In this document: piece after piece, positions 1 through 19,920 of the stretch
How the letters are laid out: each line of letters starts with the position of its first letter
Position numbering within the stretch: the stretch's first letter is position 1
Assembly (NCBI GenBank): GCA_965644295.1
Contig: CBFFRP010000270.1
Span: 1 to 19,920, forward strand
DNA from: Paraphysomonas bandaiensis
Lineage: Eukaryota > Protista > Chrysophyceae
Reading direction: 5' to 3'
DNA: 19,920 nucleotides
Notes under the pieces: model-generated
Told to the model about the DNA's origin: nothing
Databases searched by the model: none
The model's input: the letters and a program-made list of their open reading frames with translations, nothing else
Translations under genes and position numbers: made by a program

Positions 1-291
1 TTAGAATATGGACTGTATCCTAGTATATTCAATGTGGTACTTGAAGACAATGTACGAGAATACAGTGAAGTATGGTGATGTGTAGATGCTGTTATGATAT
101 TGAGAAAACTGAAATAGTTTGCTCTTTCAAGATATGTTTAGTAGCGAAAGGTCTACAGAAGTAGTGATTTATGCATGGCACAAAACGAGCTTGTGTTGTT
201 TAACACAATTTGTGTAAACGATATTAATAAATCTATCTAGTCTAACAACTTAATCTCTCTTTGATCTAAGTAAAATGAGCATTTCCCAACA
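1..291 (+). repeat. 5' LTR (starts 2 bp before the window)
   Basis: Matches 5164-5454 base for base by eye. It ends ...TTCCCAACA, immediately followed by TGG. Confidence 0.95.
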
Positions 292-3200: not shown

Positions 3201-4987
3201 GGTTCTTATATACCTCGTCGACCGATTGAACTAGATGGTGATGGTCGGGTCCGACGCAAACGGCTGCAGCGGAGACTGGCAAACGCGTCAGTTTTAGGAG
3301 AGATTAATATGGTTGAAGTACCGGATGCGCATAATATTGATCTTAACCATGCAGAGACAGAAGATATCAAGATACCAAATTCATATGCCGAGGCAGAGAG
3401 ATCTCCACAGTATCAACAATGGAGAAAAGCTCGAATGGTGGAGAAGACATCATTGCTGAAAAGACGTGTCTTGAAGATCGTGAAAATTCCAAGCGGAGTG
3501 AAATTAGTTAGAGCGAAATATGTGCATACGGTGAAGCGAGACATACTAGGGAATATAGTAAAGTACAAGGCTCGGCTAGTGGCATTAGGAAATCTCCAAG
3601 AGAAGAAGGAGGAGGAGCCGTCCACTTTCGCTCCAGTGGTTAAGGGTATAACCATTAGACTAGTGTTAGCGATTGCGTTTATGTTACAGATGCATGTGCA
3701 TCAATTAGATGTATCATCCGCATTTTGCTATGCAGATCTGGAGGATGACGTGTATATGGCACCTCCACCAGATGAGGAATTACTAGCTGGATGGTGTTTT
3801 CAACTAATCAAGGCATTGTATGGACTGCGATCTTCACCGCGACAGTGGAATAAACATATTGACAAGTTTATTAAATCATTGCATTTTACTCCGTGTATTT
3901 TGGATACGTGTTTGTATATGCGATGGAGTAACGGAAAACTGCATTTATTATTGATATATGTTGATGATATCATAATTGCATCCGCTGATCTGACTTACTT
4001 GGAAAGCGTAAAGCGTAGGTTCTGTGAAACATTCGAGATGCATGATCTGGGAGTGTGTAAGCGATTTCTGAACATCAGGATAACCAGAGGAGAAAATTGG
4101 TATATGTTAGATCAATCTGAGTATGCTAAGAATATTATCAAGAAATTCAGCTCAGTTATGGGAAAGAGTAGTAAGAATAAGGAGGCCCCACTACCTACTA
4201 ATGTTCAGGATCTGTTGGCAGAGGAACGTGAACTTACGGAGGAGCAGAAGCAGTGGGTTGACTCATTTCCGTATCGGCAAATTATTGGAGCAGTGTTGTA
4301 TCTAGCAATGCATACTAGACCTGATCTGGCTTATGCAGTGGGGTTATTGTCTCGATTTAGTAGTTGTCCGACATATGCATCGTGCAAACTGGCGATTCAC
4401 TTATTGAAATATTTGCGTGGAACAATTGATGAGGGCATCAGATTCAGTGGGAGTGAGTTCGACTTACATGTGTTCAGTGATTCAGATTGGGCTGGTGATA
4501 GACTGACTCGGCGATCGACAACAGGATACATTGTGTTCTTATGTGCAGGCGCATTGGCCTGGCAGTCTAAACTACAGACCACAGTTGCAACTTCGAGCAT
4601 GGAATCTGAATATATGGCGGAGTATGCGGCTATGCAAGAACTGGTGTGGCTTCGGGGGTGTTCAAGGAGCTCGGGCTCTTAGTTGCGAAGCCGACTCCAT
4701 TCTTTATGGATAGCAAGAGTGCGAAAGATCTCTCCGAGAATCCTGTGTATCATAAGAGGTCGAAGCATATAGACATCAAGTATCACTGGGTGAGAGAGCA
4801 TGTAAATGGAAAATTTCCTACGGCAAAGTTGATTCATGTGTCGACGGATGATATGGCGGCTGATATTTTCACGAAGGCATTGTCAACGAAACTTTTCAGT
4901 CGTCATGAGAAAACTATTACCGGGGTTAAGAGAAGTGTGTCAACCAGAGTTGAGGAGCAGCAGAAGAAGCGACCCCGAAGAGGTTAA
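275..4987 (+). pseudogene. Copia gag-pol polyprotein (about 1570 aa when repaired), broken by 4 single-base frameshifts near 368, 406-409, 1513-1517 and 4654-4658
   Basis: N-terminal VPQFNETNVEQW; CCHC knuckle CRNCKSKEHLAIDC (1141-1182); protease YIDTCCS (about 1417-1437); integrase HHCC (LHRRAGH...CDVC) and D-D-E (SADI, HADGAGE, NAIEER); RT YKARLVA, QLDVSSAF, YVDD; RNase H SDSDWAGD, SEY, KHIDIKYH, ADIFTKAL. The shifts (+1,+1,-1,-1) return the reading to the starting frame. Confidence 0.88.
292..302 (+). promoter_or_regulatory. Primer-binding site TGGTAGCGAGC, probably for initiator tRNA-Met
   Basis: TGG directly abuts the LTR end. TGGTAGC resembles the tRNAiMet PBS of yeast Ty1 (TGGTAGCGCC). 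The tRNA identity is an inference. Confidence 0.75.
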
Positions 4988-5152
4988 AGGTGTGTTTTAG
5001 TGGGTGAGAATCCCACATAACTATATATCTAGTTGACTGCTAGTTATATATGTATCTTGATAAGATTTCACATCTATTTTACCTATGAGACTAGTTTATA
5101 GCATGAAGATCACTGTACTCATTGTTGTTTTCGTATCACTGCATTCTACATT

Positions 5153-5161
5153 GAGTGGGAG
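5153..5161 (+). promoter_or_regulatory. Polypurine tract
   Basis: GAGTGGGAG immediately precedes the 3' LTR start TATTAGAAT. Confidence 0.75.
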
Positions 5162-5454
5162 TATTAGAATATGGACTGTATCCTAGTATATTCAATGTGG
5201 TACTTGAAGACAATGTACGAGAATACAGTGAAGTATGGTGATGTGTAGATGCTGTTATGATATTGAGAAAACTGAAATAGTTTGCTCTTTCAAGATATGT
5301 TTAGTAGCGAAAGGTCTACAGAAGTAGTGATTTATGCATGGCACAAAACGAGCTTGTGTTGTTTAACACAATTTGTGTAAACGATATTAATAAATCTATC
5401 TAGTCTAACAACTTAATCTCTCTTTGATCTAAGTAAAATGAGCATTTCCCAACA
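5162..5454 (+). repeat. 3' LTR, 293 bp, TA...CA termini; presumed TSD ATGCG at 5455-5459
   Basis: Identical to 1-291 over the overlap. The start is fixed by the PPT and by the TSD-bounded solo LTR. The left TSD copy is outside the window. Confidence 0.93.
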
Positions 5455-5870: not shown

Positions 5871-6144
5871 TATTGGAAATTGCTCATTTTAAGCTAGATC
5901 ACAGAGAGAATTTGTCGTAAGACTAGATAGATTTATTAATATCGTTTACACGAAGTTGTGATAACCAACACTAACTCATTTTAATCCATGAACCTCTCGT
6001 TACTGAACATATCGTGAAAGATCAAACTATTTCAGTTTCTCAATATCATCGCAGAATTTGTACATCACTATATTTCACTGTATTCTCGTACATTGTCTTC
6101 AAGTGACATACTGAATATACTAGAATAAGATCCATATTCTAATA
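5871..6144 (-). mobile_element. Diverged solo LTR of the same Copia family, inverted, with 5-bp TSD TATTA
   Basis: The reverse complement aligns with the LTR end to end (e.g. GACTAGATAGATTTATTAATATCGTTTACAC and TTCACTGTATTCTCGTACATTGTCTTCAAGT are shared). It is 274 bp versus 293 bp. TATTA lies at both 5866-5870 and 6145-6149. Confidence 0.92.
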
Positions 6145-6197: not shown

Positions 6198-6657
6198 GAT
6201 CATAGCATAAACTGAGTGTAGATGATATTCGACGGTTTCGAAAACTAATGTAGCATCGCAATTTAACTAACTAGCTAGTAACATACCCTACTATTTAGCG
6301 CTACGAAAGCTGCTTGTGCGCTACTACAAGCACTAAGGGGTAAACACTTTCGCTCAGTCGCTCAAAGCAAACGTAGTGAGCAAGCAGAATGTCGATAAAC
6401 GTGGCATCTGCTGACTTCAGGATTTTTTAGTCCTTAAGGTGAACCTTTAGCCACGTGTATCGACATTCTGCTTGCTCACTGCGTTTACTTTGAGCGACTG
6501 AGCGAAAGTGTTTACCCCTTAGTGCTTGTAGTGACGCACAAGCAGCTTTCGTAGCGCTAAATAGTAGGGTATGTTACTAGCTAGTTAGTTAAATTGCGAT
6601 GCTACATTAGTTTTCGAAGCCGTCGAATATCATCTACACTCAGTTTATGCTATGATC
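6198..6657. repeat. Long inverted repeat: about 208-bp arms (6198-6405 / 6450-6657), 44-bp spacer
   Basis: The arms are reverse complements with only a few mismatches (GATCATAGCATAAACTGAG...CTCAGTTTATGCTATGATC). Confidence 0.95.
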
Positions 6658-6925: not shown

Positions 6926-9099
6926 CTAATCTTTTCGTTCTTTCAACTGAATTTCAATCGTCTTCTTTTTTTTCGACATCGACGCGGACACAGTTTTAGT
7001 ATCACAGCAGAACTTTAACGCTAACTTCAGTACACCACCAGTTCCCTGGAGCTGCTCGTTGTTTCCCTCGTCTACTTTGTCAGGTATAGATATAATAACG
7101 CTTCTGTCAGAAACCTGGCGTGACACTACTATCACATGTACTAACAAACAGTTTTTATTGATACATACCTGTAAATCAGCTACCTTGAGTTGAGTGCGAT
7201 CAACATCACTAACCCTCAGATATATACTCCTCGAACCTTCTACATAAGAGGTAACCTACCCGCATTTCGAATCATCGTCACTTCCAATAATATTAAGTAA
7301 GTAATTCATCAACCTCGATTGTAACTGGTAAGGCAGCAGGAAGAGGGCTATCAATATGATACAACTCGGGGGAAGGCCGACTTGACTTTTCCAACGTATT
7401 TATCTGGTTCGAGTCCGGAGGTTGAAGTGCGGAAGCAGTTTGAGACCCACCTAGCACCTGATTGCAAAAGAACATCAAATTCGGCATTTACACATCAAAC
7501 AGTGCAAATTGACTTACGCCGGCTAGTTGAGAAAGCGTTGCAGACACCTCTTGATCATGCTGCCAAAAAATAATATGTGATCCACCTCATCCAAAGATTA
7601 TCTTCCCATACCTGTATTTTCTTTTTTCGATCCAGATCTGTCTGAGTGGCGAAGTCATCATCCACGCCACTGAACAGCTCATCAATTTCTTTTAGCTCTT
7701 CACTTGAAAGTGTAGATTTAGTAGCAGACACCTTTGTCTGTGACAGCATGTTCATAGTGAATTGGCAATTTATCTTGTCCACACCTGCTGAATTGAAGGT
7801 GGAGGCAGGGTGGTCTGTGGCTGTGGCATTGTTGCTGTGTCTACAACCTGGCACTTGCTCATAAACCTCGCATAAGTTCCTATCAAACTACAATTAGCAC
7901 AGATACGGTGAAATAGCGGACACACCTCCTTCAGCCGAACCAGTGCCCTCGTTGGAGCCCTCAGGATAGAGTTCAACGTTTTTAGCTGCAGCATCGTTGA
8001 GGAATCCTTTCTTAATTGCTGGCTTCTTCTGTTGAGCAGAAAGAGCACATAACGACATTGATGCATAAGAATTGATACAAAACTACCTTAGATGGCTGCT
8101 TACGTGTCCTGGTTGCCGATTGTGTTGGTTCATTAACCTCTTCAACGACAGATTTCTTTGACACATTTGTTGGCTGATGCGAATACAGTCATTCCTACAC
8201 CATATCAATCGTAACAAAACTAACCATACGCAGTTCAACATCAGCTGAAGGTTCTTTCTGCTCTCTAGACTGCTTTAGTGAGTTCAGTAGTGCTTTGCTG
8301 TCATCTGTAGTGTCAGATCGTGGGTCTGCTTCCTGTTTGGAAAGAATCTCATCTACAGATAGCAGCACGGGAGTACTCTTGTCTTCCCCTCTTCCACCCA
8401 CGTATGACTTACCAGAAACCCTTTCATACCTTGGATTGAATAGTATTTTCGACTCCTTACCAACCCATTCTAAGGCTAGATCAATCACCTGGGAGCAGAA
8501 AACTCTGTGACTGTCGCAACGAGCTATCAACACAGGGTGGAGGACTACATCAACTGCAATAGTGCCTTCGTCAACATTTCTCGCTGGACCTACCACAAGT
8601 GGAATTTCCATTCCATCTGCTGATATGCGTTCGTCTAGTGCTGGGCGACCGTTTCGATCTTTGGGTGGTTCGATAGCTTCATGTGAGCAGAAATTAATAT
8701 ATAAGTCTTTCCCTTGTTTAGATCCGAAGTCTCTGACTTTGATTCCATCATTACCAGTTGTAATACACTTAATACAAAAGCCAGATTTCGGGCGAAACAT
8801 CTTGCCACCTTCTTCCTTTCCTGAATCCTCTGTTTGTTTACCCTTTTTCAACTGTTCTGCGATAAACTGCTCGTATTCATGGGGTCTCTCCACAGACATA
8901 GAGTTAAGCATATTCCACATATCTTCAGCCTGGGCAATAAAGTGCATAGTCCACAGTCAGTCACATTTATGGCATTATGCTCAGAGCTGTTTACCTCAGC
9001 CTCTAGACCCTTCAGATCCAAGCCCATTTGTTTTGCAAACTTTTTTGCTTCCGGAGGCAATCCTTTGGGAAGCTGCTGCTCCTTGGCAGGGCGAGACAT
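6926..9099 (-). CDS. PIH1D2: PIH1 domain-containing protein, PIH1D2-like (R2TP-like co-chaperone / dynein-assembly factor family), about 560 aa, 10 exons: 9099-8995, 8929-8225, 8173-8087, 8028-7926, 7879-7785, 7737-7612, 7559-7518, 7457-7314, 7255-7169, 7114-6926
   Basis: MWNMLNSMSVERPHEYEQFIAEQLKKGKQ resembles the PIH1D2 N-terminus (FWNLLDDLAQSDPEGYEKFIQQQLKEGKQ, recalled). PIH1-domain motifs are PKSGFCIK, LYINFC, IPLVVG, VDVVLHP and VIDLAL. The C-terminus is CS-like (ASMSKKKKTIEIQL). Nine GT-AG introns of 46-65 nt join into one open frame. The start could alternatively be the ATG at 9120. Confidence 0.82.
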
Positions 9100-9647
9100 T
9101 TGTTTAATAGTTGAATTCATTATACGGTCAGTAATTAAAGACTCTTTATGAATGAAATCACTTAACAACTGAAGGAAGAAGAACTGTTATATAACAGAGA
9201 GACACACACTGCTGCTACTGTGACATACTCACATACACACACTGCGGCTCTATGTACTGCAGTATGTACACAGATGTATCTATACGTACGAGTGTGCAGC
9301 AGTACTGCATCCAGAAAAAGACTTTTTCACACCGAAATCGAAAAAGGTAGGAATTTCCTTTGAAAACGGGGAAATTGATAACACACAAAGTTAATCTGCT
9401 GCTGTCGCATCAACAAACACGTGTACGAGTGTACGAGTGCAGCAGTATATACAGCAGTACAGTACACAGATATCATACTGCATACCGTATACCGAGCTCC
9501 AGCTGTTCCAGGAAGTGTTCAGGAATATGAGGAATCTTGGAAACGTGGACATGATCACTGGACTAATGAAATCAATACCTCATCACAATTTACAATATAT
9601 TCTAAAGCACAAAATCAAAGACACTCAAACCCACAACACTCTCAATA
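9100..9647. promoter_or_regulatory. Putative bidirectional promoter between the head-to-head PIH1D2-like and YbjN-like genes
   Basis: The divergent ATGs are about 550 bp apart. The region has repeated TACGAGTG and GCAGTA motifs. Function is inferred from geometry only. Confidence 0.5.
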
Positions 9648-10139
9648 ATGCACTACATCACTATCATCGGACTTGCTCTTGTATGTTGCCAGGGATACTC
9701 ACTGGAAGCATCGGATGAATCAATCAAAAGTGAAGCTTCTACTAAGTTCTCCACGGAAGACATTGCTGCTCTATTTACTGCGAATGGCCGAACCGTATCA
9801 ATCGTAGGTGATGAGACCCTCAAAATGGTGTTCAATGTTGAAGTCATGGGCAACCAAACAGCTGTCATCACTATTGGTAATAGTGACATATCTATGTATT
9901 CGTCGTATGTTCTTCCTAAAAAGTTCAAGAATCGTGATGATGGCGCTGCCCAATCATTTGCCGGTAACTGGAATTCGAATAAACGCTTTTCAAGCGTATA
10001 TTTCGACAGAGATGGAGATTTTGTTCTTCAATCAGACCTTTTACTATGTGATGACCATAGTTCTAATGTTGAGCTTGTTGGTAAATTTGTGAGCACTTTT
10101 ATTAAGTCAGCCACTATATTTATCATTCAGATGGTATGA
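9648..10139 (+). CDS. YbjN-like (T3SS-chaperone/CesT-fold) domain protein with signal peptide, 163 aa, intronless; copy 1
   Basis: Hydrophobic leader MHYITIIGLALVCCQG. The motif NWNSNKRFSSVYFDRDGDFVLQSDL fits the bacterial YbjN-family pattern WNxxKRFSxxYxDxDGDxVLxxD (recalled), followed by an amphipathic C-terminal helix. Confidence 0.72.
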   Translation: MHYITIIGLALVCCQGYSLEASDESIKSEASTKFSTEDIAALFTANGRTVSIVGDETLKMVFNVEVMGNQTAVITIGNSDISMYSSYVLPKKFKNRDDGAAQSFAGNWNSNKRFSSVYFDRDGDFVLQSDLLLCDDHSSNVELVGKFVSTFIKSATIFIIQMV

Positions 10140-11078
10140 TATGCATAGTCACTCAAGGTTGCATGATCGTACACTATTTAATTTATGATATGATATTTCA
10201 TGTATTTAATTTGATATATGATACTTTTGAAAAGGAATTTATGGCTGAGTAATAATAATTTGCTTAATACTTACTGTTTTATTGAGTAGAATTAGCTAGT
10301 CACTCTCTAGTACACTTTGCATAACTGTCTCATACCGATAGTGTTGCATATTGCATAGACAGGCAGTACATTTTGTCCTGATTCTACGAGACACTATATT
10401 CCGTCATATTGATTGTTCATGTATTATACATACAGTACTTGTCATCACTATATTAAATACGGAATTCTCCAATGCTGCACGATTCATATTATTACTTAGT
10501 TACTTATTATGTGTGGATTGTGGATCAGTTCGATAAGAGCTACAGACGAACATCATGCATTATTCTAATCGTTAAAAATATTGTCATTACGTGAGAGATA
10601 GACATTTCGTTTATTTATTATTTCAGTTTCATTGTTGTTACAGGCAATCAGTACTCATGCTACATATTGTTGAGAATTATCTTTACCAGATACTCATTGA
10701 TAACGACTACTATTTCGGACGCCTTAGTTTTGTCCTATTTGTAAACAAAGTGAGGTAATCGAGGGCAATGTGTGAGGTTATCCATGTAATTTTCCGCCTT
10801 TAGGGAGTTTCAAATTGCTTCTGCTTCAACGCTTCGTTTTACTTGGAAATCTGGTTACACAAAGTGGTTGTGTGATCTAAGTCGTAAACTTCATTCCGGT
10901 GTTTGCTGCATTTCCACAAAACTCACCATTATCTTCAGCCTGAACATTACAGTAATATCCAAGTCTTGTCTTCAGATAGTTCCGGCTTCTTGGCTGATGA
11001 ACTCTGACCCTCTACAACAGCACAGCAACACCTGTGCCACAGATAACACACTACGCTGATCATTAGCATATCAATAGA

Positions 11079-11272
11079 TCAGCCACTGCACATATCTTCA
11101 GCCTGGGCAATAAAGTGCATAGTCCACAGTCAGTCACATTTATGGCATTATGCTCAGAGCTGTTTACCTCAGCCTCTAGACCCTTCAGATCCAAGCCCAT
11201 TTGTTTTGCAAACTTTTTTGCTTCCGGAGGCAATCCTTTGGGAAGCTGCTGCTCCTTGGCAGGGCGAGACAT
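11079..11272 (-). pseudogene. Truncated PIH1D2-like 5' fragment (exon 1, intron 1 and 14 nt of exon 2; would give a 42-aa peptide ending AEDMCSG*)
   Basis: 11089-11272 is a copy of 8916-9099, fused at the unit junction to unrelated sequence with a TGA at 11081-11079. Confidence 0.8.
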
Positions 11273-11811
11273 TTGTTTAATAGTTGAATTCATTATACGG
11301 TCAGTAATTAAAGACTCTTTATGAATGAAATCACTTAACAACTGAAGGAAGAAGAACTGTTATATAACAGAGAGACACACACTGCTGCTACTGTGACATA
11401 CTCACATACACACACTGCGGCTCTATGTACTGCAGTATGTACACAGATGTATCTATACGTACGAGTGTGCAGCAGTACTGCATCCAGAAAAAGACTTTTT
11501 CACACCGAAATCGAAAAAGGTAGGAATTTCCTTTGAAAACGGGGAAATTGATATTACACACAAAGTTAATCCATCAACAAACACGTGTACGAGTGTACGA
11601 GTGCAGCAGTATATACAGCAGTACAGTACACAGATATCATACTGCATACCGTATACCGAGCTCCAGCTGTTCCAGGAAGTGTTCAGGAATATGAGGAATC
11701 TTGGAAACGTGGACATGATCACTGGACTAATGAAATCAATACCTCATCACAATTTACAATATATTCTAAAGCACAAAATCAAAGACACTCAAACCCACAA
11801 CACTCTCAATA

Positions 11812-12303
11812 ATGCACTACATCACTATCATCGGACTTGCTCTTGTATGTTGCCAGGGATACTCACTGGAAGCATCGGATGAATCAATCAAAAGTGAAGC
11901 TTCTACTAAGTTCTCCACGGAAGACATTGCTGCTCTATTTACTGCGAATGGCCGAACCGTATCAATCGTAGGTGATGAGACCCTCAAAATGGTGTTCAAT
12001 GTTGAAGTCATGGGCAACCAAACAGCTGTCATCACTATTGGTAATAGTGACATATCTATGTATTCGTCGTATGTTCTTCCTAAAAAGTTCAAGAATCGTG
12101 ATGATGGCGCTGCCCAATCATTTGCCGGTAACTGGAATTCGAATAAACGCTTTTCAAGCGTATATTTCGACAGAGATGGAGATTTTGTTCTTCAATCAGA
12201 CCTTTTACTATGTGATGACCATAGTTCTAATGTTGAGCTTGTTGGTAAATTTGTGAGCACTTTTATTAAGTCAGCCACTATATTTATCATTCAGATGGTA
12301 TGA
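11812..12303 (+). CDS. YbjN-like secreted protein, copy 2
   Basis: Translation identical to copy 1. Confidence 0.72.
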   Translation: MHYITIIGLALVCCQGYSLEASDESIKSEASTKFSTEDIAALFTANGRTVSIVGDETLKMVFNVEVMGNQTAVITIGNSDISMYSSYVLPKKFKNRDDGAAQSFAGNWNSNKRFSSVYFDRDGDFVLQSDLLLCDDHSSNVELVGKFVSTFIKSATIFIIQMV

Positions 12304-13242
12304 TATGCATAGTCACTCAAGGTTGCATGATCGTACACTATTTAATTTATGATATGATATTTCATGTATTTAATTTGATATATGATACTTTTGAAAAGGA
12401 ATTTATGGCTGAGTAATAATAATTTGCTTAATACTTACTGTTTTATTGAGTAGAATTAGCTAGTCACTCTCTAGTACACTTTGCATAACTGTCTCATACC
12501 GATAGTGTTGCATATTGCATAGACAGGCAGTACATTTTGTCCTGATTCTACGAGACACTATATTCCGTCATATTGATTGTTCATGTATTATACATACAGT
12601 ACTTGTCATCACTATATTAAATACGGAATTCTCCAATGCTGCACGATTCATATTATTACTTAGTTACTTATTATGTGTGGATTGTGGATCAGTTCGATAA
12701 GAGCTACAGACGAACATCATGCATTATTCTAATCGTTAAAAATATTGTCATTACGTGAGAGATAGACATTTCGTTTATTTATTATTTCAGTTTCATTGTT
12801 GTTACAGGCAATCAGTACTCATGCTACATATTGTTGAGAATTATCTTTACCAGATACTCATTGATAACGACTACTATTTCGGACGCCTTAGTTTTGTCCT
12901 ATTTGTAAACAAAGTGAGGTAATCGAGGGCAATGTGTGAGGTTATCCATGTAATTTTCCGCCTTTAGGGAGTTTCAAATTGCTTCTGCTTCAACGCTTCG
13001 TTTTACTTGGAAATCTGGTTACACAAAGTGGTTGTGTGATCTAAGTCGTAAACTTCATTCCGGTGTTTGCTGCATTTCCACAAAACTCACCATTATCTTC
13101 AGCCTGAACATTACAGTAATATCCAAGTCTTGTCTTCAGATAGTTCCGGCTTCTTGGCTGATGAACTCTGACCCTCTACAACAGCACAGCAACACCTGTG
13201 CCACAGATAACACACTACGCTGATCATTAGCATATCAATAGA

Positions 13243-13436
13243 TCAGCCACTGCACATATCTTCAGCCTGGGCAATAAAGTGCATAGTCCACAGTCAGTCA
13301 CATTTATGGCATTATGCTCAGAGCTGTTTACCTCAGCCTCTAGACCCTTCAGATCCAAGCCCATTTGTTTTGCAAACTTTTTTGCTTCCGGAGGCAATCC
13401 TTTGGGAAGCTGCTGCTCCTTGGCAGGGCGAGACAT
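13243..13436 (-). pseudogene. Truncated PIH1D2-like 5' fragment, second copy
   Basis: Same as 11079-11272, offset 2164. Confidence 0.8.
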
Positions 13437-13975
13437 TTGTTTAATAGTTGAATTCATTATACGGTCAGTAATTAAAGACTCTTTATGAATGAAATCACTT
13501 AACAACTGAAGGAAGAAGAACTGTTATATAACAGAGAGACACACACTGCTGCTACTGTGACATACTCACATACACACACTGCGGCTCTATGTACTGCAGT
13601 ATGTACACAGATGTATCTATACGTACGAGTGTGCAGCAGTACTGCATCCAGAAAAAGACTTTTTCACACCGAAATCGAAAAAGGTAGGAATTTCCTTTGA
13701 AAACGGGGAAATTGATATTACACACAAAGTTAATCCATCAACAAACACGTGTACGAGTGTACGAGTGCAGCAGTATATACAGCAGTACAGTACACAGATA
13801 TCATACTGCATACCGTATACCGAGCTCCAGCTGTTCCAGGAAGTGTTCAGGAATATGAGGAATCTTGGAAACGTGGACATGATCACTGGACTAATGAAAT
13901 CAATACCTCATCACAATTTACAATATATTCTAAAGCACAAAATCAAAGACACTCAAACCCACAACACTCTCAATA

Positions 13976-14467
13976 ATGCACTACATCACTATCATCGGAC
14001 TTGCTCTTGTATGTTGCCAGGGATACTCACTGGAAGCATCGGATGAATCAATCAAAAGTGAAGCTTCTACTAAGTTCTCCACGGAAGACATTGCTGCTCT
14101 ATTTACTGCGAATGGCCGAACCGTATCAATCGTAGGTGATGAGACCCTCAAAATGGTGTTCAATGTTGAAGTCATGGGCAACCAAACAGCTGTCATCACT
14201 ATTGGTAATAGTGACATATCTATGTATTCGTCGTATGTTCTTCCTAAAAAGTTCAAGAATCGTGATGATGGCGCTGCCCAATCATTTGCCGGTAACTGGA
14301 ATTCGAATAAACGCTTTTCAAGCGTATATTTCGACAGAGATGGAGATTTTGTTCTTCAATCAGACCTTTTACTATGTGATGACCATAGTTCTAATGTTGA
14401 GCTTGTTGGTAAATTTGTGAGCACTTTTATTAAGTCAGCCACTATATTTATCATTCAGATGGTATGA
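13976..14467 (+). CDS. YbjN-like secreted protein, copy 3
   Basis: Translation identical to copy 1. Confidence 0.72.
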   Translation: MHYITIIGLALVCCQGYSLEASDESIKSEASTKFSTEDIAALFTANGRTVSIVGDETLKMVFNVEVMGNQTAVITIGNSDISMYSSYVLPKKFKNRDDGAAQSFAGNWNSNKRFSSVYFDRDGDFVLQSDLLLCDDHSSNVELVGKFVSTFIKSATIFIIQMV

Positions 14468-14685
14468 TATGCATAGTCACTCAAGGTTGCATGATCGTAC
14501 ACTATTTAATTTATGATATGATATTTCATGTATTTAATTTGATATATGATACTTTTGAAAAGGAATTTATGGCTGAGTAATAATAATTTGCTTAATACTT
14601 ACTGTTTTATTGAGTAGAATTAGCTAGTCACTCTCTAGTACACTTTGCATAACTGTCTCATACCGATAGTGTTGCATATTGCATA

Positions 14686-16356
14686 TAATTCTCTGCCCTA
14701 CGATGGCAAATACAGTCCAACATAAAGTTTCACCCTATTAACCAGCTCCAAGCCCAATGTCTCTATTGAGACCGTGGCTGAGTCACATCAGTGTGCCCAG
14801 GGCCTTTTACACTCCCTTACTGCTGCATTTTGTTGACCACCACGCTTCCGACAAATTACCTGTCACACCATGTTGTACACGCTCCAAGTCCCCCTGCCTG
14901 GCCTTGCAACCTTCACCCTACTCAACTACTTCAGTTAAACAACGTGCCTGCACCAATGCAGCGCTGACCGCATGCATATGCTATCACCTAAGGAGACACC
15001 TTCGTCTCCTACACGGTTCTCTACGGATACAACCACTTACAGCATGGCTCGTGCGAGCAGATCCACGCAAACGGCCCCCATGTACCTTCTCTGCAACCCC
15101 TGTCTCCTCTCGACACCTCTCCACTGCACAACAGGGCCGTCTCCTGACGACAACCCAGCCCAACCCAACATGGTTTGTCTGTGGTCTATCCACCCAGCAG
15201 GCTACCCCCTCACCCTGTTCACCTATCACCCCCACAGCCCATCCATCTCATTGGATAGACACTGTATTCCGCATACGGTATACTCGACTACTGTACTACT
15301 GTGTCCTACAGGATGTATACCATTCCGTGTATACCTCTACTGCTGTTGGACACATCACCATGTCCATGTACCTGTCTACCTGTACTGCTGGACACATCAC
15401 CAGCTCTCTCTCTCTGTCCAACACACTCATAACACCACTGCAGTGTCATACACACACACAGTACACTCTACCTCCTCCTAGAAAACCCCCAGACAAACCA
15501 TCTCCCCTCCCTTCGTCTCTGATACCTTGCCGTCATCTTCCTTACACACACTCTCTATGCCTCAGTCTGTACCCCCCTGCACCAACACAGACACTAACAA
15601 GAGCAGCTGAGGACGTCCGAGTGTCTCCTCCAGACCATCATCATCATCACGATCATCTCGTGCATAGGTCTATCAGAGTACTCGACCTCAGTGACTCTTG
15701 TTCTGTTGCGCAGTCTCACTCCCCTCAATCAGATGTTGCCTCTCTTGCACCATCACACTCCCTCTCGACTCCCTGTAGCTGGACACACCGGATGACCCTC
15801 ACATCCCACCCCTGTACAGCTATACACCCTCTTGCATGTGTTCTCTACCGCTGGCTAAGACAGCAAAAGAGCCGATTTCGACGCTTCTTCACAGTAGGCC
15901 ATAACCTTTTGCAAGACCTTCATCCACATACCTCCGAGCCACTTGGAACAATGCCTAAAGGAAGGCCACCAGATCGCCAATCTCAGAAGGGCATATTACT
16001 GTTTCCCCTAACTGCCATAAGGCTAATAAGTCAGTCCCCGTGAGGTACATAAGGCTATCTATCATATAGCGAGTGGAGTCTCATCCCAAGAGGAGACCTC
16101 CAGATCACACGCGCCGGTGAGTCCCAGGACACACGATCATGGCGAGCCTCATAACACACACTAAGAACGGAAGTGGTTGCACCTTGGTGCTTGCGGCGAC
16201 GCACAAGCAGCTTCTGTAGCGTTAAATAGTAGGATAAAAGAGTTTGTATTGATTAGTTACGGGTAGTAGTCTAACTAGTATGACTAGCATTCTTCTAGCC
16301 ACTAATTGGTGCAGGCTTTCAACGCCTATTGCTAAATAATCAGACATTCAATATAT
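14686..16356 (+). mobile_element. 1671-bp insertion with 10-bp TSD ATATTGCATA, no TIRs or LTRs, short AT tail; probably a non-autonomous non-LTR-type retroelement
   Basis: The empty site is visible in U1 and U2 (GTTGC-ATATTGCATA-GAC). The TSD lies at 14676-14685 and 16357-16366. The element ends ...GACATTC-AATATAT, and its plus strand is strongly C-rich and G-poor. The insertion is certain; the class is inferred. Confidence 0.85.
14757..16043 (+). CDS. Hypothetical 428-aa Pro/Thr/Ser/His-rich ORF inside the insertion
   Basis: It is ATG-initiated about 70 nt from the element start and fills most of the element. It has RKPPDKP and RPPD motifs and a His run, but no RT or transposase motif. The G-poor strand lowers stop-codon frequency, so the ORF may be incidental. 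Confidence 0.35.
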   Translation: MSLLRPWLSHISVPRAFYTPLLLHFVDHHASDKLPVTPCCTRSKSPCLALQPSPYSTTSVKQRACTNAALTACICYHLRRHLRLLHGSLRIQPLTAWLVRADPRKRPPCTFSATPVSSRHLSTAQQGRLLTTTQPNPTWFVCGLSTQQATPSPCSPITPTAHPSHWIDTVFRIRYTRLLYYCVLQDVYHSVYTSTAVGHITMSMYLSTCTAGHITSSLSLSNTLITPLQCHTHTQYTLPPPRKPPDKPSPLPSSLIPCRHLPYTHSLCLSLYPPAPTQTLTRAAEDVRVSPPDHHHHHDHLVHRSIRVLDLSDSCSVAQSHSPQSDVASLAPSHSLSTPCSWTHRMTLTSHPCTAIHPLACVLYRWLRQQKSRFRRFFTVGHNLLQDLHPHTSEPLGTMPKGRPPDRQSQKGILLFPLTAIRLISQSP

Positions 16357-17087
16357 ATATTGCATAGACAGGCAGTACATTTTGTCCTGATTCTACGAGA
16401 CACTATATTCCGTCATATTGATTGTTCATGTATTATACATACAGTACTTGTCATCACTATATTAAATACGGAATTCTCCAATGCTGCACGATTCATATTA
16501 TTACTTAGTTACTTATTATGTGTGGATTGTGGATCAGTTCGATAAGAGCTACAGACGAACATCATGCATTATTCTAATCGTTAAAAATATTGTCATTACG
16601 TGAGAGATAGACATTTCGTTTATTTATTATTTCAGTTTCATTGTTGTTACAGGCAATCAGTACTCATGCTACATATTGTTGAGAATTATCTTTACCAGAT
16701 ACTCATTGATAACGACTACTATTTCGGACGCCTTAGTTTTGTCCTATTTGTAAACAAAGTGAGGTAATCGAGGGCAATGTGTGAGGTTATCCATGTAATT
16801 TTCCGCCTTTAGGGAGTTTCAAATTGCTTCTGCTTCAACGCTTCGTTTTACTTGGAAATCTGGTTACACAAAGTGGTTGTGTGATCTAAGTCGTAAACTT
16901 CATTCCGGTGTTTGCTGCATTTCCACAAAACTCACCATTATCTTCAGCCTGAACATTACAGTAATATCCAAGTCTTGTCTTCAGATAGTTCCGGCTTCTT
17001 GGCTGATGAACTCTGACCCTCTACAACAGCACAGCAACACCTGTGCCACAGATAACACACTACGCTGATCATTAGCATATCAATAGA

Positions 17088-17281
17088 TCAGCCACTGCAC
17101 ATATCTTCAGCCTGGGCAATAAAGTGCATAGTCCACAGTCAGTCACATTTATGGCATTATGCTCAGAGCTGTTTACCTCAGCCTCTAGACCCTTCAGATC
17201 CAAGCCCATTTGTTTTGCAAACTTTTTTGCTTCCGGAGGCAATCCTTTGGGAAGCTGCTGCTCCTTGGCAGGGCGAGACAT
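17088..17281 (-). pseudogene. Truncated PIH1D2-like 5' fragment, third copy
   Basis: Same as 13243-13436, offset 3845. Confidence 0.8.
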
Positions 17282-17820
17282 TTGTTTAATAGTTGAATTC
17301 ATTATACGGTCAGTAATTAAAGACTCTTTATGAATGAAATCACTTAACAACTGAAGGAAGAAGAACTGTTATATAACAGAGAGACACACACTGCTGCTAC
17401 TGTGACATACTCACATACACACACTGCGGCTCTATGTACTGCAGTATGTACACAGATGTATCTATACGTACGAGTGTGCAGCAGTACTGCATCCAGAAAA
17501 AGACTTTTTCACACCGAAATCGAAAAAGGTAGGAATTTCCTTTGAAAACGGGGAAATTGATATTACACACAAAGTTAATCCATCAACAAACACGTGTACG
17601 AGTGTACGAGTGCAGCAGTATATACAGCAGTACAGTACACAGATATCATACTGCATACCGTATACCGAGCTCCAGCTGTTCCAGGAAGTGTTCAGGAATA
17701 TGAGGAATCTTGGAAACGTGGACATGATCACTGGACTAATGAAATCAATACCTCATCACAATTTACAATATATTCTAAAGCACAAAATCAAAGACACTCA
17801 AACCCACAACACTCTCAATA

Positions 17821-18312
17821 ATGCACTACATCACTATCATCGGACTTGCTCTTGTATGTTGCCAGGGATACTCACTGGAAGCATCGGATGAATCAATCAA
17901 AAGTGAAGCTTCTACTAAGTTCTCCACGGAAGACATTGCTGCTCTATTTACTGCGAATGGCCGAACCGTATCAATCGTAGGTGATGAGACCCTCAAAATG
18001 GTGTTCAATGTTGAAGTCATGGGCAACCAAACAGCTGTCATCACTATTGGTAATAGTGACATATCTATGTATTCGTCGTATGTTCTTCCTAAAAAGTTCA
18101 AGAATCGTGATGATGGCGCTGCCCAATCATTTGCCGGTAACTGGAATTCGAATAAACGCTTTTCAAGCGTATATTTCGACAGAGATGGAGATTTTGTTCT
18201 TCAATCAGACCTTTTACTATGTGATGACCATAGTTCTAATGTTGAGCTTGTTGGTAAATTTGTGAGCACTTTTATTAAGTCAGCCACTATATTTATCATT
18301 CAGATGGTATGA
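17821..18312 (+). CDS. YbjN-like secreted protein, copy 4
   Basis: Translation identical to copy 1. Confidence 0.72.
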   Translation: MHYITIIGLALVCCQGYSLEASDESIKSEASTKFSTEDIAALFTANGRTVSIVGDETLKMVFNVEVMGNQTAVITIGNSDISMYSSYVLPKKFKNRDDGAAQSFAGNWNSNKRFSSVYFDRDGDFVLQSDLLLCDDHSSNVELVGKFVSTFIKSATIFIIQMV

Positions 18313-18530
18313 TATGCATAGTCACTCAAGGTTGCATGATCGTACACTATTTAATTTATGATATGATATTTCATGTATTTAATTTGATATATGATACTTT
18401 TGAAAAGGAATTTATGGCTGAGTAATAATAATTTGCTTAATACTTACTGTTTTATTGAGTAGAATTAGCTAGTCACTCTCTAGTACACTTTGCATAACTG
18501 TCTCATACCGATAGTGTTGCATATTGCATA

Positions 18531-19920
18531 TAATTCTCTGCCCTACGATGGCAAATACAGTCCAACATAAAGTTTCACCCTATTAACCAGCTCCAAGCCC
18601 AATGTCTCTATTGAGACCGTGGCTGAGTCACATCAGTGTGCCCAGGGCCTTTTACACTCCCTTACTGCTGCATTTTGTTGACCACCACGCTTCCGACAAA
18701 TTACCTGTCACACCATGTTGTACACGCTCCAAGTCCCCCTGCCTGGCCTTGCAACCTTCACCCTACTCAACTACTTCAGTTAAACAACGTGCCTGCACCA
18801 ATGCAGCGCTGACCGCATGCATATGCTATCACCTAAGGAGACACCTTCGTCTCCTACACGGTTCTCTACGGATACAACCACTTACAGCATGGCTCGTGCG
18901 AGCAGATCCACGCAAACGGCCCCCATGTACCTTCTCTGCAACCCCTGTCTCCTCTCGACACCTCTCCACTGCACAACAGGGCCGTCTCCTGACGACAACC
19001 CAGCCCAACCCAACATGGTTTGTCTGTGGTCTATCCACCCAGCAGGCTACCCCCTCACCCTGTTCACCTATCACCCCCACAGCCCATCCATCTCATTGGA
19101 TAGACACTGTATTCCGCATACGGTATACTCGACTACTGTACTACTGTGTCCTACAGGATGTATACCATTCCGTGTATACCTCTACTGCTGTTGGACACAT
19201 CACCATGTCCATGTACCTGTCTACCTGTACTGCTGGACACATCACCAGCTCTCTCTCTCTGTCCAACACACTCATAACACCACTGCAGTGTCATACACAC
19301 ACACAGTACACTCTACCTCCTCCTAGAAAACCCCCAGACAAACCATCTCCCCTCCCTTCGTCTCTGATACCTTGCCGTCATCTTCCTTACACACACTCTC
19401 TATGCCTCAGTCTGTACCCCCCTGCACCAACACAGACACTAACAAGAGCAGCTGAGGACGTCCGAGTGTCTCCTCCAGACCATCATCATCATCACGATCA
19501 TCTCGTGCATAGGTCTATCAGAGTACTCGACCTCAGTGACTCTTGTTCTGTTGCGCAGTCTCACTCCCCTCAATCAGATGTTGCCTCTCTTGCACCATCA
19601 CACTCCCTCTCGACTCCCTGTAGCTGGACACACCGGATGACCCTCACATCCCACCCCTGTACAGCTATACACCCTCTTGCATGTGTTCTCTACCGCTGGC
19701 TAAGACAGCAAAAGAGCCGATTTCGACGCTTCTTCACAGTAGGCCATAACCTTTTGCAAGACCTTCATCCACATACCTCCGAGCCACTTGGAACAATGCC
19801 TAAAGGAAGGCCACCAGATCGCCAATCTCAGAAGGGCATATTACTGTTTCCCCTAACTGCCATAAGGCTAATAAGTCAGTCCCCGTGAGGTACATAAGGC
19901 TATCTATCATATAGCGAGTG
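18531..19920 (+). mobile_element. Second copy of the 1671-bp insertion (truncated by the window end), at the identical site in unit 4
   Basis: Same left junction, ATATTGCATA|TAATTCTCTG (18521-18540), and an identical ORF at 18602-19888. Confidence 0.85.
18602..19888 (+). CDS. Hypothetical 428-aa ORF, second copy
   Basis: Translation identical to 14757-16043. Confidence 0.35.
   Translation: MSLLRPWLSHISVPRAFYTPLLLHFVDHHASDKLPVTPCCTRSKSPCLALQPSPYSTTSVKQRACTNAALTACICYHLRRHLRLLHGSLRIQPLTAWLVRADPRKRPPCTFSATPVSSRHLSTAQQGRLLTTTQPNPTWFVCGLSTQQATPSPCSPITPTAHPSHWIDTVFRIRYTRLLYYCVLQDVYHSVYTSTAVGHITMSMYLSTCTAGHITSSLSLSNTLITPLQCHTHTQYTLPPPRKPPDKPSPLPSSLIPCRHLPYTHSLCLSLYPPAPTQTLTRAAEDVRVSPPDHHHHHDHLVHRSIRVLDLSDSCSVAQSHSPQSDVASLAPSHSLSTPCSWTHRMTLTSHPCTAIHPLACVLYRWLRQQKSRFRRFFTVGHNLLQDLHPHTSEPLGTMPKGRPPDRQSQKGILLFPLTAIRLISQSP

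What the first reader, a model, noticed from the sequence alone, without database searches (positions are those of the whole stretch)
9648..10139. Bacterial-type YbjN-domain gene with a signal peptide in a eukaryotic genome (HGT candidate)
Seen: a 163-aa intronless ORF with a hydrophobic leader and NWNSNKRFSSVYFDRDGDFVLQSDL. It sits between a 9-intron eukaryotic gene and eukaryotic TEs, so simple bacterial contamination is unlikely. Known: YbjN (putative bacterial sensory-transduction regulator, CesT/T3SS-chaperone-like fold) is a mainly prokaryotic family, and many members carry signal peptides. Inference: a horizontally acquired protein routed to the secretory or phagosomal system, possibly acting on bacterial prey or pathogens.
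Basis: partly seen in the sequence, partly recalled or inferred. Interest (0 to 1): 0.75.

Follow-up and report, generated by a model that had tools for sequence, protein, structure and literature searches.

The report
Secreted YbjN-like gene, tandemly amplified, chrysophyte
A bacterivorous golden alga (Paraphysomonas-like) carries a real, transcribed, intronless nuclear gene for a secreted small protein of the otherwise almost purely bacterial YbjN / type-III-chaperone fold, present as at least four identical tandem copies; it belongs to a small clade of protist proteins, so any transfer from bacteria was old, not recent.

Summary
ORF 9648-10139 (+), 163 aa, passes Pfam YbjN (29.6 bits, cut-off 22). 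It models as the YbjN/T3SS-chaperone fold and is predicted to form a homodimer. It has a hydrophobic N-terminal leader.

It is a nuclear gene of a chrysophyte; the only named relatives are Paraphysomonas transcripts.
- It lies beside a spliced PIH1 gene and a copia retrotransposon.
- A genome-wide 1.67-kb mobile element has inserted into its repeat unit.
- Diverged paralogs sit on 259-kb and 1.07-Mb contigs.
- Poly(A) metatranscriptome contigs cover the ORF without a gap.

The same scan recorded this array in a separate note, s1-439297.

The HGT reading is only partly supported. Among 1.84 billion representative proteins, just five non-Paraphysomonas clusters are close kin. All come from metagenomes or an unnamed sequencing run, and one has a GT-AG intron, so it is eukaryotic. 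With Paraphysomonas they form a well-supported clade (99/99) on a long stem. That clade sits next to exported (lipoprotein or signal-peptide) bacterial YbjN proteins. Nesting inside bacteria is not shown (AU p = 0.55).

Most likely this was one old bacterial acquisition followed by eukaryotic diversification and recent dosage amplification. Function is inferred only: a non-enzymatic dimeric binding protein of the secretory or food-vacuole lumen.

The parts
9648..10139 (+). YbjN-like gene, copy 1 (163 aa, intronless, stop included)
   Evidence: RNA contig 9713-10270 in X17
9648..9701 (+). predicted signal peptide (aa 1-18, cleavage about QGYS|LE; inferred)
   Evidence: hydropathy; pLDDT <50 for aa 1-30; leader conserved in all paralogs and present in kin
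9756..10112 (+). YbjN / T3SS-chaperone-fold domain (aa 37-155); the conserved motif W108..L132 lies in the predicted dimer interface
9606..10270 (+). minimum transcript extent seen in RNA contigs (5' contig from 9606, 3' contig to 10270)
   Evidence: records 4 and 7
11812..12303 (+). YbjN-like gene, copy 2 (identical)
   Evidence: poly(A) RNA contig 11816-12298 (record 6)
13976..14467 (+). YbjN-like gene, copy 3 (identical)
17821..18312 (+). YbjN-like gene, copy 4 (identical)
8916..11088 (.). tandem unit 1 (2173 bp): truncated or real PIH1 5' end, shared promoter region, YbjN gene, 3' flank
   Evidence: it differs from unit 2 only by an 11-nt versus 2-nt indel at 9397-9407
11089..13252 (.). 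tandem unit 2 (2164 bp); junction 11088/11089 is bridged by an independent DNA contig
   Evidence: record 23 (X4, 10950-11215)
13253..17097 (.). tandem unit 3, interrupted by the 1671-bp mobile element
17098..19920 (.). tandem unit 4 with the same element; the contig ends inside it, so the copy number is at least 4
14686..16356 (.). 1671-bp dispersed repeat with a 10-bp target-site duplication ATATTGCATA; at least 40 copies genome-wide
   Evidence: the same insertion end appears as a loose end in run X3
8195..9168 (-). 5' part of the neighbouring PIH1-domain gene; its first exon and the 65-nt intron 8929-8993 lie inside the repeat unit

Best explanation
This is a functional, intronless nuclear gene of a Paraphysomonas-like heterotrophic chrysophyte. 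It encodes a precursor with an ER signal peptide and an acidic mature protein of about 145 aa (pI about 4.7). The protein adopts the YbjN / class-I type-III-chaperone fold and most likely forms a homodimer through the family's conserved helix-plus-hairpin interface. The gene belongs to a small, patchily distributed clade of leader-bearing YbjN-like proteins. Some members carry extra Cys-rich modules or a duplicated domain, and at least one member besides Paraphysomonas is eukaryotic. The clade's closest outside relatives are exported (lipoprotein or signal-peptide) bacterial YbjN proteins. The most likely history is a single old bacterium-to-eukaryote transfer of an already exported form. This was followed by divergence, dispersed duplication in this genome (seven intact loci and one pseudogene), and a very recent tandem amplification or homogenisation of a 2.16-kb unit that raises gene dosage. 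As in the rest of the family, the protein is probably not an enzyme. It is more likely a binding or holding module that grips extended polypeptide segments of a partner, here in the lumen of the secretory or endolysosomal (food-vacuole) system or outside the cell. Shown here: gene, fold, family membership, eukaryotic context, transcription, amplification, clade. Inferred: signal-peptide cleavage, dimer, direction and age of transfer, and function.
For: Family and fold. Pfam YbjN scores above its cut-off. The AlphaFold model has pLDDT about 90 over residues 31-163. Foldseek's best PDB hits are DR_1245, PA14_16140, Spa15, SicP, E. coli YbjN (TM 0.65) and AmyR. All ESM-Atlas structural neighbours are bacterial YbjN or CesT clusters.

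Dimer. ipSAE is 0.83 against 0.00 for the best of 3 controls, the runs share at least 97% of contacts, and partner pLDDT is at least 91. This mark was reached by 21 of 30 solved homodimers and 0 of 23 solved monomers, and the pass may be from memory of solved YbjN dimers. The interface (residues 102-150) contains the conserved motif, as described for the family's dimer interface (PMC5398634).

Eukaryotic gene.
- The contig carries a copia element and a spliced PIH1 gene.
- A genome-wide TE has inserted in the unit.
- Paralogs lie on contigs of 259 kb and 1.07 Mb.
- dN/dS among paralogs is 0.32-0.51.
- Paraphysomonas MMETSP transcripts are 88% and 71% identical.
- Contigs of poly(A)-selected marine metatranscriptomes cover the ORF collinearly, while intergenic DNA is uncovered and the neighbour's introns are removed.

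Clade. Only 13 hits at E<=1e-3 were found in 1.84e9 representatives. The tree gives 99/99 support for Paraphysomonas plus P0004, P0006, P0007, P0012 and P0009. P0012's gene has a frame-restoring GT-AG intron after a signal-peptide exon.

Exported bacterial kin. These have lipoboxes or signal peptides and separate from leaderless paralogs of the same genomes at 97/97.
Against: No signal-peptide predictor or localisation data were available. The dimer is a prediction that may reflect memory of solved YbjN dimers. The taxonomic source of four of the five kin clusters is unknown (one search found no named relatives). Bacteria were sampled from one phylum only. The backbone of the tree is a polytomy, and an AU test does not reject exported bacteria as a single clade (p 0.545), so neither donor nor direction is demonstrated. 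No partner, ligand or phenotype is known for any exported YbjN-like protein. Depths of contigs cannot quantify expression (caveat).
Confidence: 0.6

Rival explanations
1. Recent, lineage-specific horizontal transfer from a bacterium (prey or symbiont) directly into this organism.
For: The family is overwhelmingly bacterial. The gene is intronless. The only named eukaryote with it is Paraphysomonas.
Against: No close bacterial homolog exists in 1.84e9 representatives; the best bacterial-type hit has E 4.8e-4. Bacterial kin share only 39-42% identity over about 55 residues. The gene groups at 99/99 with other leader-bearing proteins, one of which contains an intron, on a long stem of 1.34 substitutions per site. 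Paralogs have diverged to dS about 0.55. GC content matches the host.
Confidence: 0.06
2. Not a transfer from free-living bacteria. Instead, an old eukaryotic or endosymbiont-derived (plastid or mitochondrial ancestor) gene that was inherited vertically and lost in most lineages.
For: There is a monophyletic eukaryote-type clade with a long stem. The AU test allows it to lie outside the exported bacterial group. Cyanobacteria have YbjN proteins (control genomes; 2plg), and they were not sampled in the tree.
Against: Distribution is extremely sparse. There are six clusters at 50% identity in a library that includes MMETSP and EukProt, and only Paraphysomonas is named. There is no transit-peptide-like region after the leader; the sequence there is acidic (LEASDES).
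Confidence: 0.2
3. Bacterial contamination or an assembly artefact; either the ORF or its four copies are not really in the eukaryotic genome.
For: Contig C270 is only 19,920 bp and ends inside the repeat. The copies are 100% identical.
Against: The same contig carries a spliced eukaryotic gene and a copia element. A eukaryotic genome-wide TE interrupts two units. The unit-to-unit junction and the TE end are seen in contigs of independent runs from differently labelled samples (record 23; loose end matched). Paralogs lie on large contigs. Poly(A) RNA covers the ORF.
Confidence: 0.02
4. Acquired through a giant virus (NCLDV) that infects chrysophytes.
For: Chrysophytes are infected by giant viruses (10.1101/2025.06.17.660233, abstract only).
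Against: There is no relative in 2.9 million viral contigs using the motif pattern. There is no viral structural match at E<=1e-3.
Confidence: 0.02

Closest known systems
YbjN family (Pfam PF10722; E. coli YbjN 6VU7, Erwinia AmyR 5FR7, Deinococcus DR1245 4H5B, P. aeruginosa PA14_16140/BacA 8Q8O)
   Same: Pfam score above the cut-off. Same alpha-beta-beta-beta-beta-alpha-beta-beta-alpha fold. Small acidic protein. Predicted homodimer through the conserved helix/hairpin region. No catalytic motif.
   Different: The characterised members are cytoplasmic bacterial proteins without leaders, and a profile of this clade does not find them by sequence. This protein has a eukaryotic-type leader, is encoded in a protist nucleus, and is tandemly amplified.
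Exported bacterial YbjN-like lipoproteins or periplasmic proteins (uncharacterised; e.g. L019 ORF 2692-3252 in an uncultured proteobacterium MAG, and 15 of 301 genomes of that phylum)
   Same: N-terminal export signal followed by one YbjN domain. Shared motif W-N-x-x-[KR]-R-x-x-x-A/V-Y-x-D-x-D-G-D-x-V-L-[EQ]-S-D-L. These are the closest bacterial relatives.
   Different: They have a lipobox (LAGC) or bacterial signal peptides, occur in high-GC bacterial operon-type contexts, and share only about 25-40% identity. Their function is also unknown.
Class I type III secretion chaperones (CesT, SicP, Spa15, SycE/H/T; Pfam clan CL0097)
   Same: Same fold, and the structures rank among the top matches. 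They are acidic dimers that hold extended effector segments, which is the basis of the proposed binding mechanism.
   Different: There is no sequence-level membership, no T3SS or effector gene nearby, the host is eukaryotic, and the protein is itself targeted to the secretory pathway.

Membership tests
YbjN (PF10722) | Sequence match to the family HMM above the curated gathering score | tested here: met
   29.6 bits against 22, E 9.3e-7, residues 37-155 on profile positions 3-117 of 126. All seven genomic copies score over the cut-off.
YbjN (PF10722) | T3SS-chaperone-like alpha/beta fold (helix, antiparallel sheet, central helix, hairpin, C-terminal helix) | tested here: met
   Model elements are H36-45, E50-54, E57-64, E68-76, E80-87, H98-111, E116-119, E125-132 and H137-162, with pLDDT about 90. 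PDB hits include 4h5b, 8q8o, 6vu7 (TMt 0.65) and 5fr7. Atlas YbjN clusters reach TM up to 0.77.
YbjN (PF10722) | Homodimer through the conserved central-helix/strand interface (PMC5398634) | tested here: met
   This is a prediction only. ipSAE is 0.83 against 0.00 for the best of 3 controls; the interface is residues 102-150; the pass may be from memory of solved YbjN dimers.
Exported bacterial YbjN subfamily (unnamed) | N-terminal export signal plus the WN..KR...Y.D.DGD.VL.SDL motif | tested here: met
   The motif is present at residues 108-131. The leader is present but of eukaryotic type. The clade groups with the exported bacterial forms at 97/97 against leaderless paralogs.
Class I T3SS chaperones (CesT/SycE-type) | Encoded next to a cognate effector or inside a T3SS locus | tested here: not met
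   The neighbours are a PIH1-domain gene, a copia element and a non-coding TE. The host is eukaryotic.
Class I T3SS chaperones (CesT/SycE-type) | Sequence match to CesT, Chaperone_III or related Pfam models | tested here: not met
   Only PF10722 is reported, even at E<=10.
Horizontally transferred gene of bacterial origin | Eukaryotic sequences nested with support inside a bacterial clade | tested here: inconclusive
   The clade sits in an unresolved polytomy with exported bacterial proteins. The AU test does not reject bacterial monophyly (p 0.545). Only one bacterial phylum was sampled.
Secreted protein (classical ER signal peptide) | Cleavable N-terminal signal peptide recognised by a dedicated predictor or by experiment | not testable with these tools
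   The support is indirect only: a hydrophobic core at residues 4-14, small residues at positions -3 and -1 (G, S), a disordered leader in the model, and a conserved N-glycosylation sequon at N69.

The most novel reading that the evidence does not exclude
A phagotrophic protist has domesticated and dosage-amplified an exported bacterial chaperone-fold protein as a luminal or extracellular binder of bacterial polypeptides. It might act as a decoy or holdase for prey or pathogen proteins in the food vacuole. This would define a previously unrecognised eukaryotic family of secreted YbjN-like proteins, sometimes fused to Cys-rich modules, with a role in predator-prey interaction.
Probability: 0.12. 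Interest if true: 0.8.

Novelty: new variant of a known kind. Interest (0 to 1): 0.5.

Why it matters
YbjN is the most widespread member of the type-III-chaperone clan, yet it remains poorly understood and is regarded as essentially prokaryotic (PMC13466201). A nuclear, transcribed, secretory-pathway version in protists shows that the fold has been recruited outside the bacterial cytoplasm, and the recent gene amplification points to selection for dosage. It also draws attention to an uncharacterised exported bacterial subfamily. For protist biology, it is a tractable candidate for a transcribed secreted factor of a cosmopolitan marine bacterivore. For HGT studies it is a cautionary case: the bacterial look of the gene is real, but the transfer, if any, is old, and the tree does not resolve it.

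Tried and rejected
- Word-index protein searches with the protein, with a 12-sequence alignment and with kin P0006 returned only Paraphysomonas proteins or the query itself. They add nothing on distribution.
- NCBIfam and PDB sequence searches were blank.
- The first structure model, from four close paralogs, was poor (pLDDT 63.5). It was replaced by the model from the 12-row alignment.
- The first genome-contig scan with A2 failed for lack of a conserved block. It was repeated with A3.
- A viral origin was tested and not found.
- I tried to assign P0004's contig to a chrysophyte through its LRR neighbour, with no match in this genome.
- GC contrast between gene and flanks, and contig ends, gave no decisive sign of kingdom for the other kin contigs.
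- Pfam gave nothing for the Cys-rich exons of the L017 gene or for the N-terminal extensions of P0006 and P0007.
- The L017 exons were searched separately, by reference. The spliced product was deliberately not joined or searched.
- A plastid-targeting reading was rejected. The residue after the predicted cleavage site is L, followed by acidic residues, and there is no transit-peptide-like stretch.
- A C-terminal membrane anchor was rejected. The hydrophobic C-terminus is the last amphipathic helix of the fold and part of the predicted dimer interface.

Full report
**1. Observation**

The window holds an ATG-to-TGA ORF at 9648-10139 (+) of 163 aa with the quoted peptide. Pfam-A reports one family, YbjN (PF10722): E 9.3e-7, 29.6 bits against a curated cut-off of 22, covering residues 37-155. 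NCBIfam and a PDB sequence search found nothing.

The N-terminus MHYITIIGLALVCCQGYS has a strongly hydrophobic core. It is followed by an acidic, low-complexity stretch that is unstructured in the model. No dedicated signal-peptide predictor was available, so the signal peptide is inferred.

**2.

The ORF is present four times in the window with identical sequence: 9648, 11812, 13976 and 17821.

- Self-comparison shows a head-to-tail unit of 2164-2173 bp beginning at 8916.
- Units 1 and 2 differ only by a small indel at 9397-9407 in the upstream intergenic region.
- Units 3 and 4 each carry the same 1671-bp insertion (14686-16356 and 18531 to the end), flanked by a 10-bp target duplication ATATTGCATA.
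- That insertion is a dispersed repeat with at least 40 copies across the 62.5-Mb genome, many 99-100% identical.
- Contig C270 is exactly the window and stops inside unit 4, so four is a lower bound.
- Each unit also contains a copy of the first exon, the first intron and 13 nt of exon 2 of the neighbouring minus-strand PIH1 gene. The full PIH1 gene is single-copy.
- The array was recorded on the same window as a separate note of this scan (s1-439297), as was the mobile element (s1-439352). My results agree with both.

**3. Is it really in a eukaryotic genome, and is it expressed?**

Left of the gene lie a copia-type LTR retrotransposon and a PIH1 N-terminal-domain gene. The retrotransposon has identical 291-bp LTRs at 1-291 and 5164-5454, plus RVT_2, an integrase-related SH3 domain and gag.

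Logan contigs of four public runs were laid on 8000-12400.

- In a poly(A)-selected marine metatranscriptome (X15), PIH1 contigs skip 8029-8086 and 8174-8224 with minus-strand GT..AG ends. This is spliced RNA.
- In the same run, a 484-nt contig covers 11816-12298 (the whole ORF of copy 2) collinearly, and an 83-nt contig starts at 9606.
- A second study's cDNA run (X17) has a 558-nt piece covering 9713-10270.
- The intergenic stretch 8882-9469 has no RNA contig.
- The ORF contig's k-mer depth is 1375, against 4-12 for PIH1. The tool warns that contig depths cannot rank genes, so I take this only as a hint of high expression.
- Two DNA runs labelled as other organisms (X3, X4) hold the region at 100% identity.
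- X4 has a contig (10950-11215) that bridges the unit junction 11088/11089.
- X3 has a loose end at 10348 that equals the last 27 nt of the mobile element.

The tandem arrangement and the insertion are therefore not artefacts of this one assembly.

The whole genome contains three more intact paralogs and one decayed copy:

| Contig | Contig size | Copies | Identity to window protein |
|---|---|---|---|
| C181 | 259 kb | 1 intact | 85% |
| C297 | 1.07 Mb | 2 intact, convergent | about 70% |
| C39 | 143 kb | 1 decayed | not applicable |

The C181 copy shares the unit's flanks, including the PIH1 fragment, at 79-89% identity. It therefore derives from an older copy of the same unit. dN/dS among paralogs is 0.32-0.51, with dS up to about 0.6. 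This indicates purifying selection and a history much older than the array. No other PF10722 gene exists in the genome.

**4. Organism**

The only named relatives are MMETSP/EukProt transcripts of Paraphysomonas, a colourless phagotrophic chrysophyte, at 88% and 71% identity. They correspond to the C181 and C297 paralog types. The window's stretch also occurs near-identically in marine metagenomes and metatranscriptomes of several studies.

**5. Fold and quaternary structure**

With a 12-row alignment the AlphaFold model reaches pLDDT about 90 over residues 31-163. Its topology is helix, four strands, helix, two strands, then a long C-terminal helix.

- Foldseek against the PDB returns DR_1245, PA14_16140, Spa15, SycT, SicP, E. 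coli YbjN (TM 0.65 by target), AmyR and CesT.
- The ESM-Atlas shape search returns only bacterial YbjN or CesT-type clusters.
- The feature search gives leads to the same family.
- A homodimer of residues 31-163 scored ipSAE 0.83 against 0.00 for the best of three controls. The runs agree in at least 97% of contacts and partner pLDDT is at least 91.
- That mark was reached by 21 of 30 solved homodimers and 0 of 23 solved monomers. The pass may come from memory of solved YbjN dimers.
- The interface (residues 102-150) holds the clade's conserved motif W108-N-x-x-K-R-F-S-x-x-Y-x-D-x-D-G-D-F-V-L-Q-S-D-L. This matches the report that family-wide conservation is confined to the core and the dimer interface (PMC5398634).
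- The mature protein is acidic (pI 4.67) and has one N-glycosylation sequon conserved in all paralogs.

**6. Relatives and the HGT question**

A profile of the four paralogs was searched against 1.84 billion representatives and found only 13 proteins at E<=1e-3.

- Apart from Paraphysomonas and obvious low-complexity hits, the relatives are:

| Protein | E-value | Note |
|---|---|---|
| P0004 | 1e-13 | |
| P0006 | 5e-10 | also in Tara Oceans contigs |
| P0007 | 1e-6 | |
| P0009 | 1e-5 | two tandem domains |
| P0012 | 1e-4 | |
| P0014 | 5e-4 | |

- All come from metagenomes or an unnamed sequencing run on contigs under 3 kb.
- P0004, P0006, P0007, P0009 and P0014 begin with hydrophobic leaders.
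- P0014 is a strong Pfam YbjN match next to a sulfatase gene and looks bacterial.
- In P0012's contig (L017), an upstream exon (1020-1257) encodes a signal peptide and a Cys-rich module. A 123-nt GT..AG phase-1 intron (1258-1380) follows. The next exon continues in frame with a second copy of the Cys-rich module and then the YbjN-like domain. This is a eukaryotic gene structure.
- I searched the exons separately and did not join them (no Pfam family).
- Pattern scans of 185,579 prokaryotic genomes and of JGI metagenomes found high-GC bacterial lipoproteins with a LAGC lipobox that carry the same motif at 38-42% identity over about 55 residues.
- The 12-row profile hits 15 of 301 genomes of that phylum, and most hits have export signals.

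A maximum-likelihood tree (31 rows, 128 columns, LG+C20 PMSF) gives these groupings:

- Paraphysomonas paralogs form a clade at 96/96.
- P0004 joins them at 91/78.
- All five non-Paraphysomonas kin clusters (P0004, P0006, P0007, P0012, P0009) join at 99/99, on a stem of 1.34 substitutions per site.
- This clade, together with the exported bacterial proteins, separates from leaderless YbjN paralogs of the same bacteria at 97/97.
- The order within that large group is unresolved.

An AU test does not reject a tree in which the exported bacterial proteins form one clade (p 0.545). The data therefore show three things: a distinct clade that is at least partly eukaryotic, affinity to the exported bacterial subfamily, and no close bacterial donor. 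They do not show nesting within bacteria.

Bacterial origin is inferred from the lopsided distribution. The clan is described as predominantly prokaryotic (PMC13466201), and every Atlas neighbour cluster is bacterial. No viral relative was found.

**7. Mechanism (inferred)**

Characterised members of this fold act without catalysis. As dimers, they hold extended segments of partner proteins (PMC5398634, PMC3575483, PMC9503650).

The leader, the acidic mature domain, the glycosylation sequon, the exported bacterial kin and the fusion to Cys-rich extracellular-type modules in a relative all point one way. The protein probably works as a dimeric binding module in the ER-to-endolysosome lumen or outside the cell. 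The tandem amplification points to selection for dosage.

Whether the partner is an endogenous cargo or a prey or pathogen protein is unknown.

**8. Verdict**

Contamination is excluded and transcription is shown. The HGT interpretation is only partly supported: an old, unresolved origin rather than a recent acquisition.

This is a new, eukaryotic, secretory-pathway variant of a known bacterial family. Its interest is moderate.

Noticed in passing
window 10626-11406 (-): The truncated copies of PIH1 exon 1 inside the array are transcribed. They are spliced with the gene's own 65-nt GT-AG intron (11102-11166) and read on into the 3' flank of the preceding unit. This gives a chimeric minus-strand RNA antisense to the intergenic region (X15 record 5).
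   Followed up: partly
window 14686-16356 and 18531-19920: A 1671-bp C-rich dispersed repeat with a 10-bp TSD, no Pfam hit in its long low-complexity ORF, and at least 40 genomic copies, many 99-100% identical. It appears to be a recently active non-autonomous element. It is also noted by the scan as s1-439352.
   Followed up: partly
window 1-5454: A full-length copia-type LTR retrotransposon with 100% identical 291-bp LTRs and open gag and pol frames (RVT_2, SH3_retrovirus), which implies a very recent insertion. An 80%-identical LTR-like fragment in reverse orientation lies at 5875-6144.
   Followed up: no
window 6198-6657: A 460-bp stretch that is 92.6% identical to its own reverse complement, i.e. 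a near-perfect palindrome, between the retrotransposon and the PIH1 gene.
   Followed up: no
L017:1020-2084 (JGI metagenome contig): A relative with a signal-peptide exon, a 123-nt GT-AG intron and two about 45-aa six-Cys repeats ahead of the YbjN-like domain. P0009 (L018) has two YbjN-like domains in tandem. The eukaryote-type clade therefore has multi-domain architectures.
   Followed up: partly
L019:2692-3252 and 15 of 301 genomes of its phylum: An uncharacterised subfamily of exported (lipobox or signal-peptide) bacterial YbjN-like proteins. In L019 it lies between SpoVR-like and RadC-like ORFs, identified by reading their translations, without a family scan. One genome (G070) has two adjacent copies.
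   Followed up: partly
P0008 (MMETSP Transcript_6621) and G000:C39:14842-15467: A decayed family member with several stops on contig C39, and a 92-aa MMETSP transcript that looks like a frameshifted copy. Possibly a transcribed pseudogene.
   Followed up: no
L007:370-1000 (G000:C297 upstream of a paralog): A long ATGT/ATAC-type microsatellite tract next to the C297 paralog. Run X3 also shows a CATACATA-type loose end at 9447/11611 upstream of the window gene, which suggests length-variable simple repeats in the promoters of this family.
   Followed up: no
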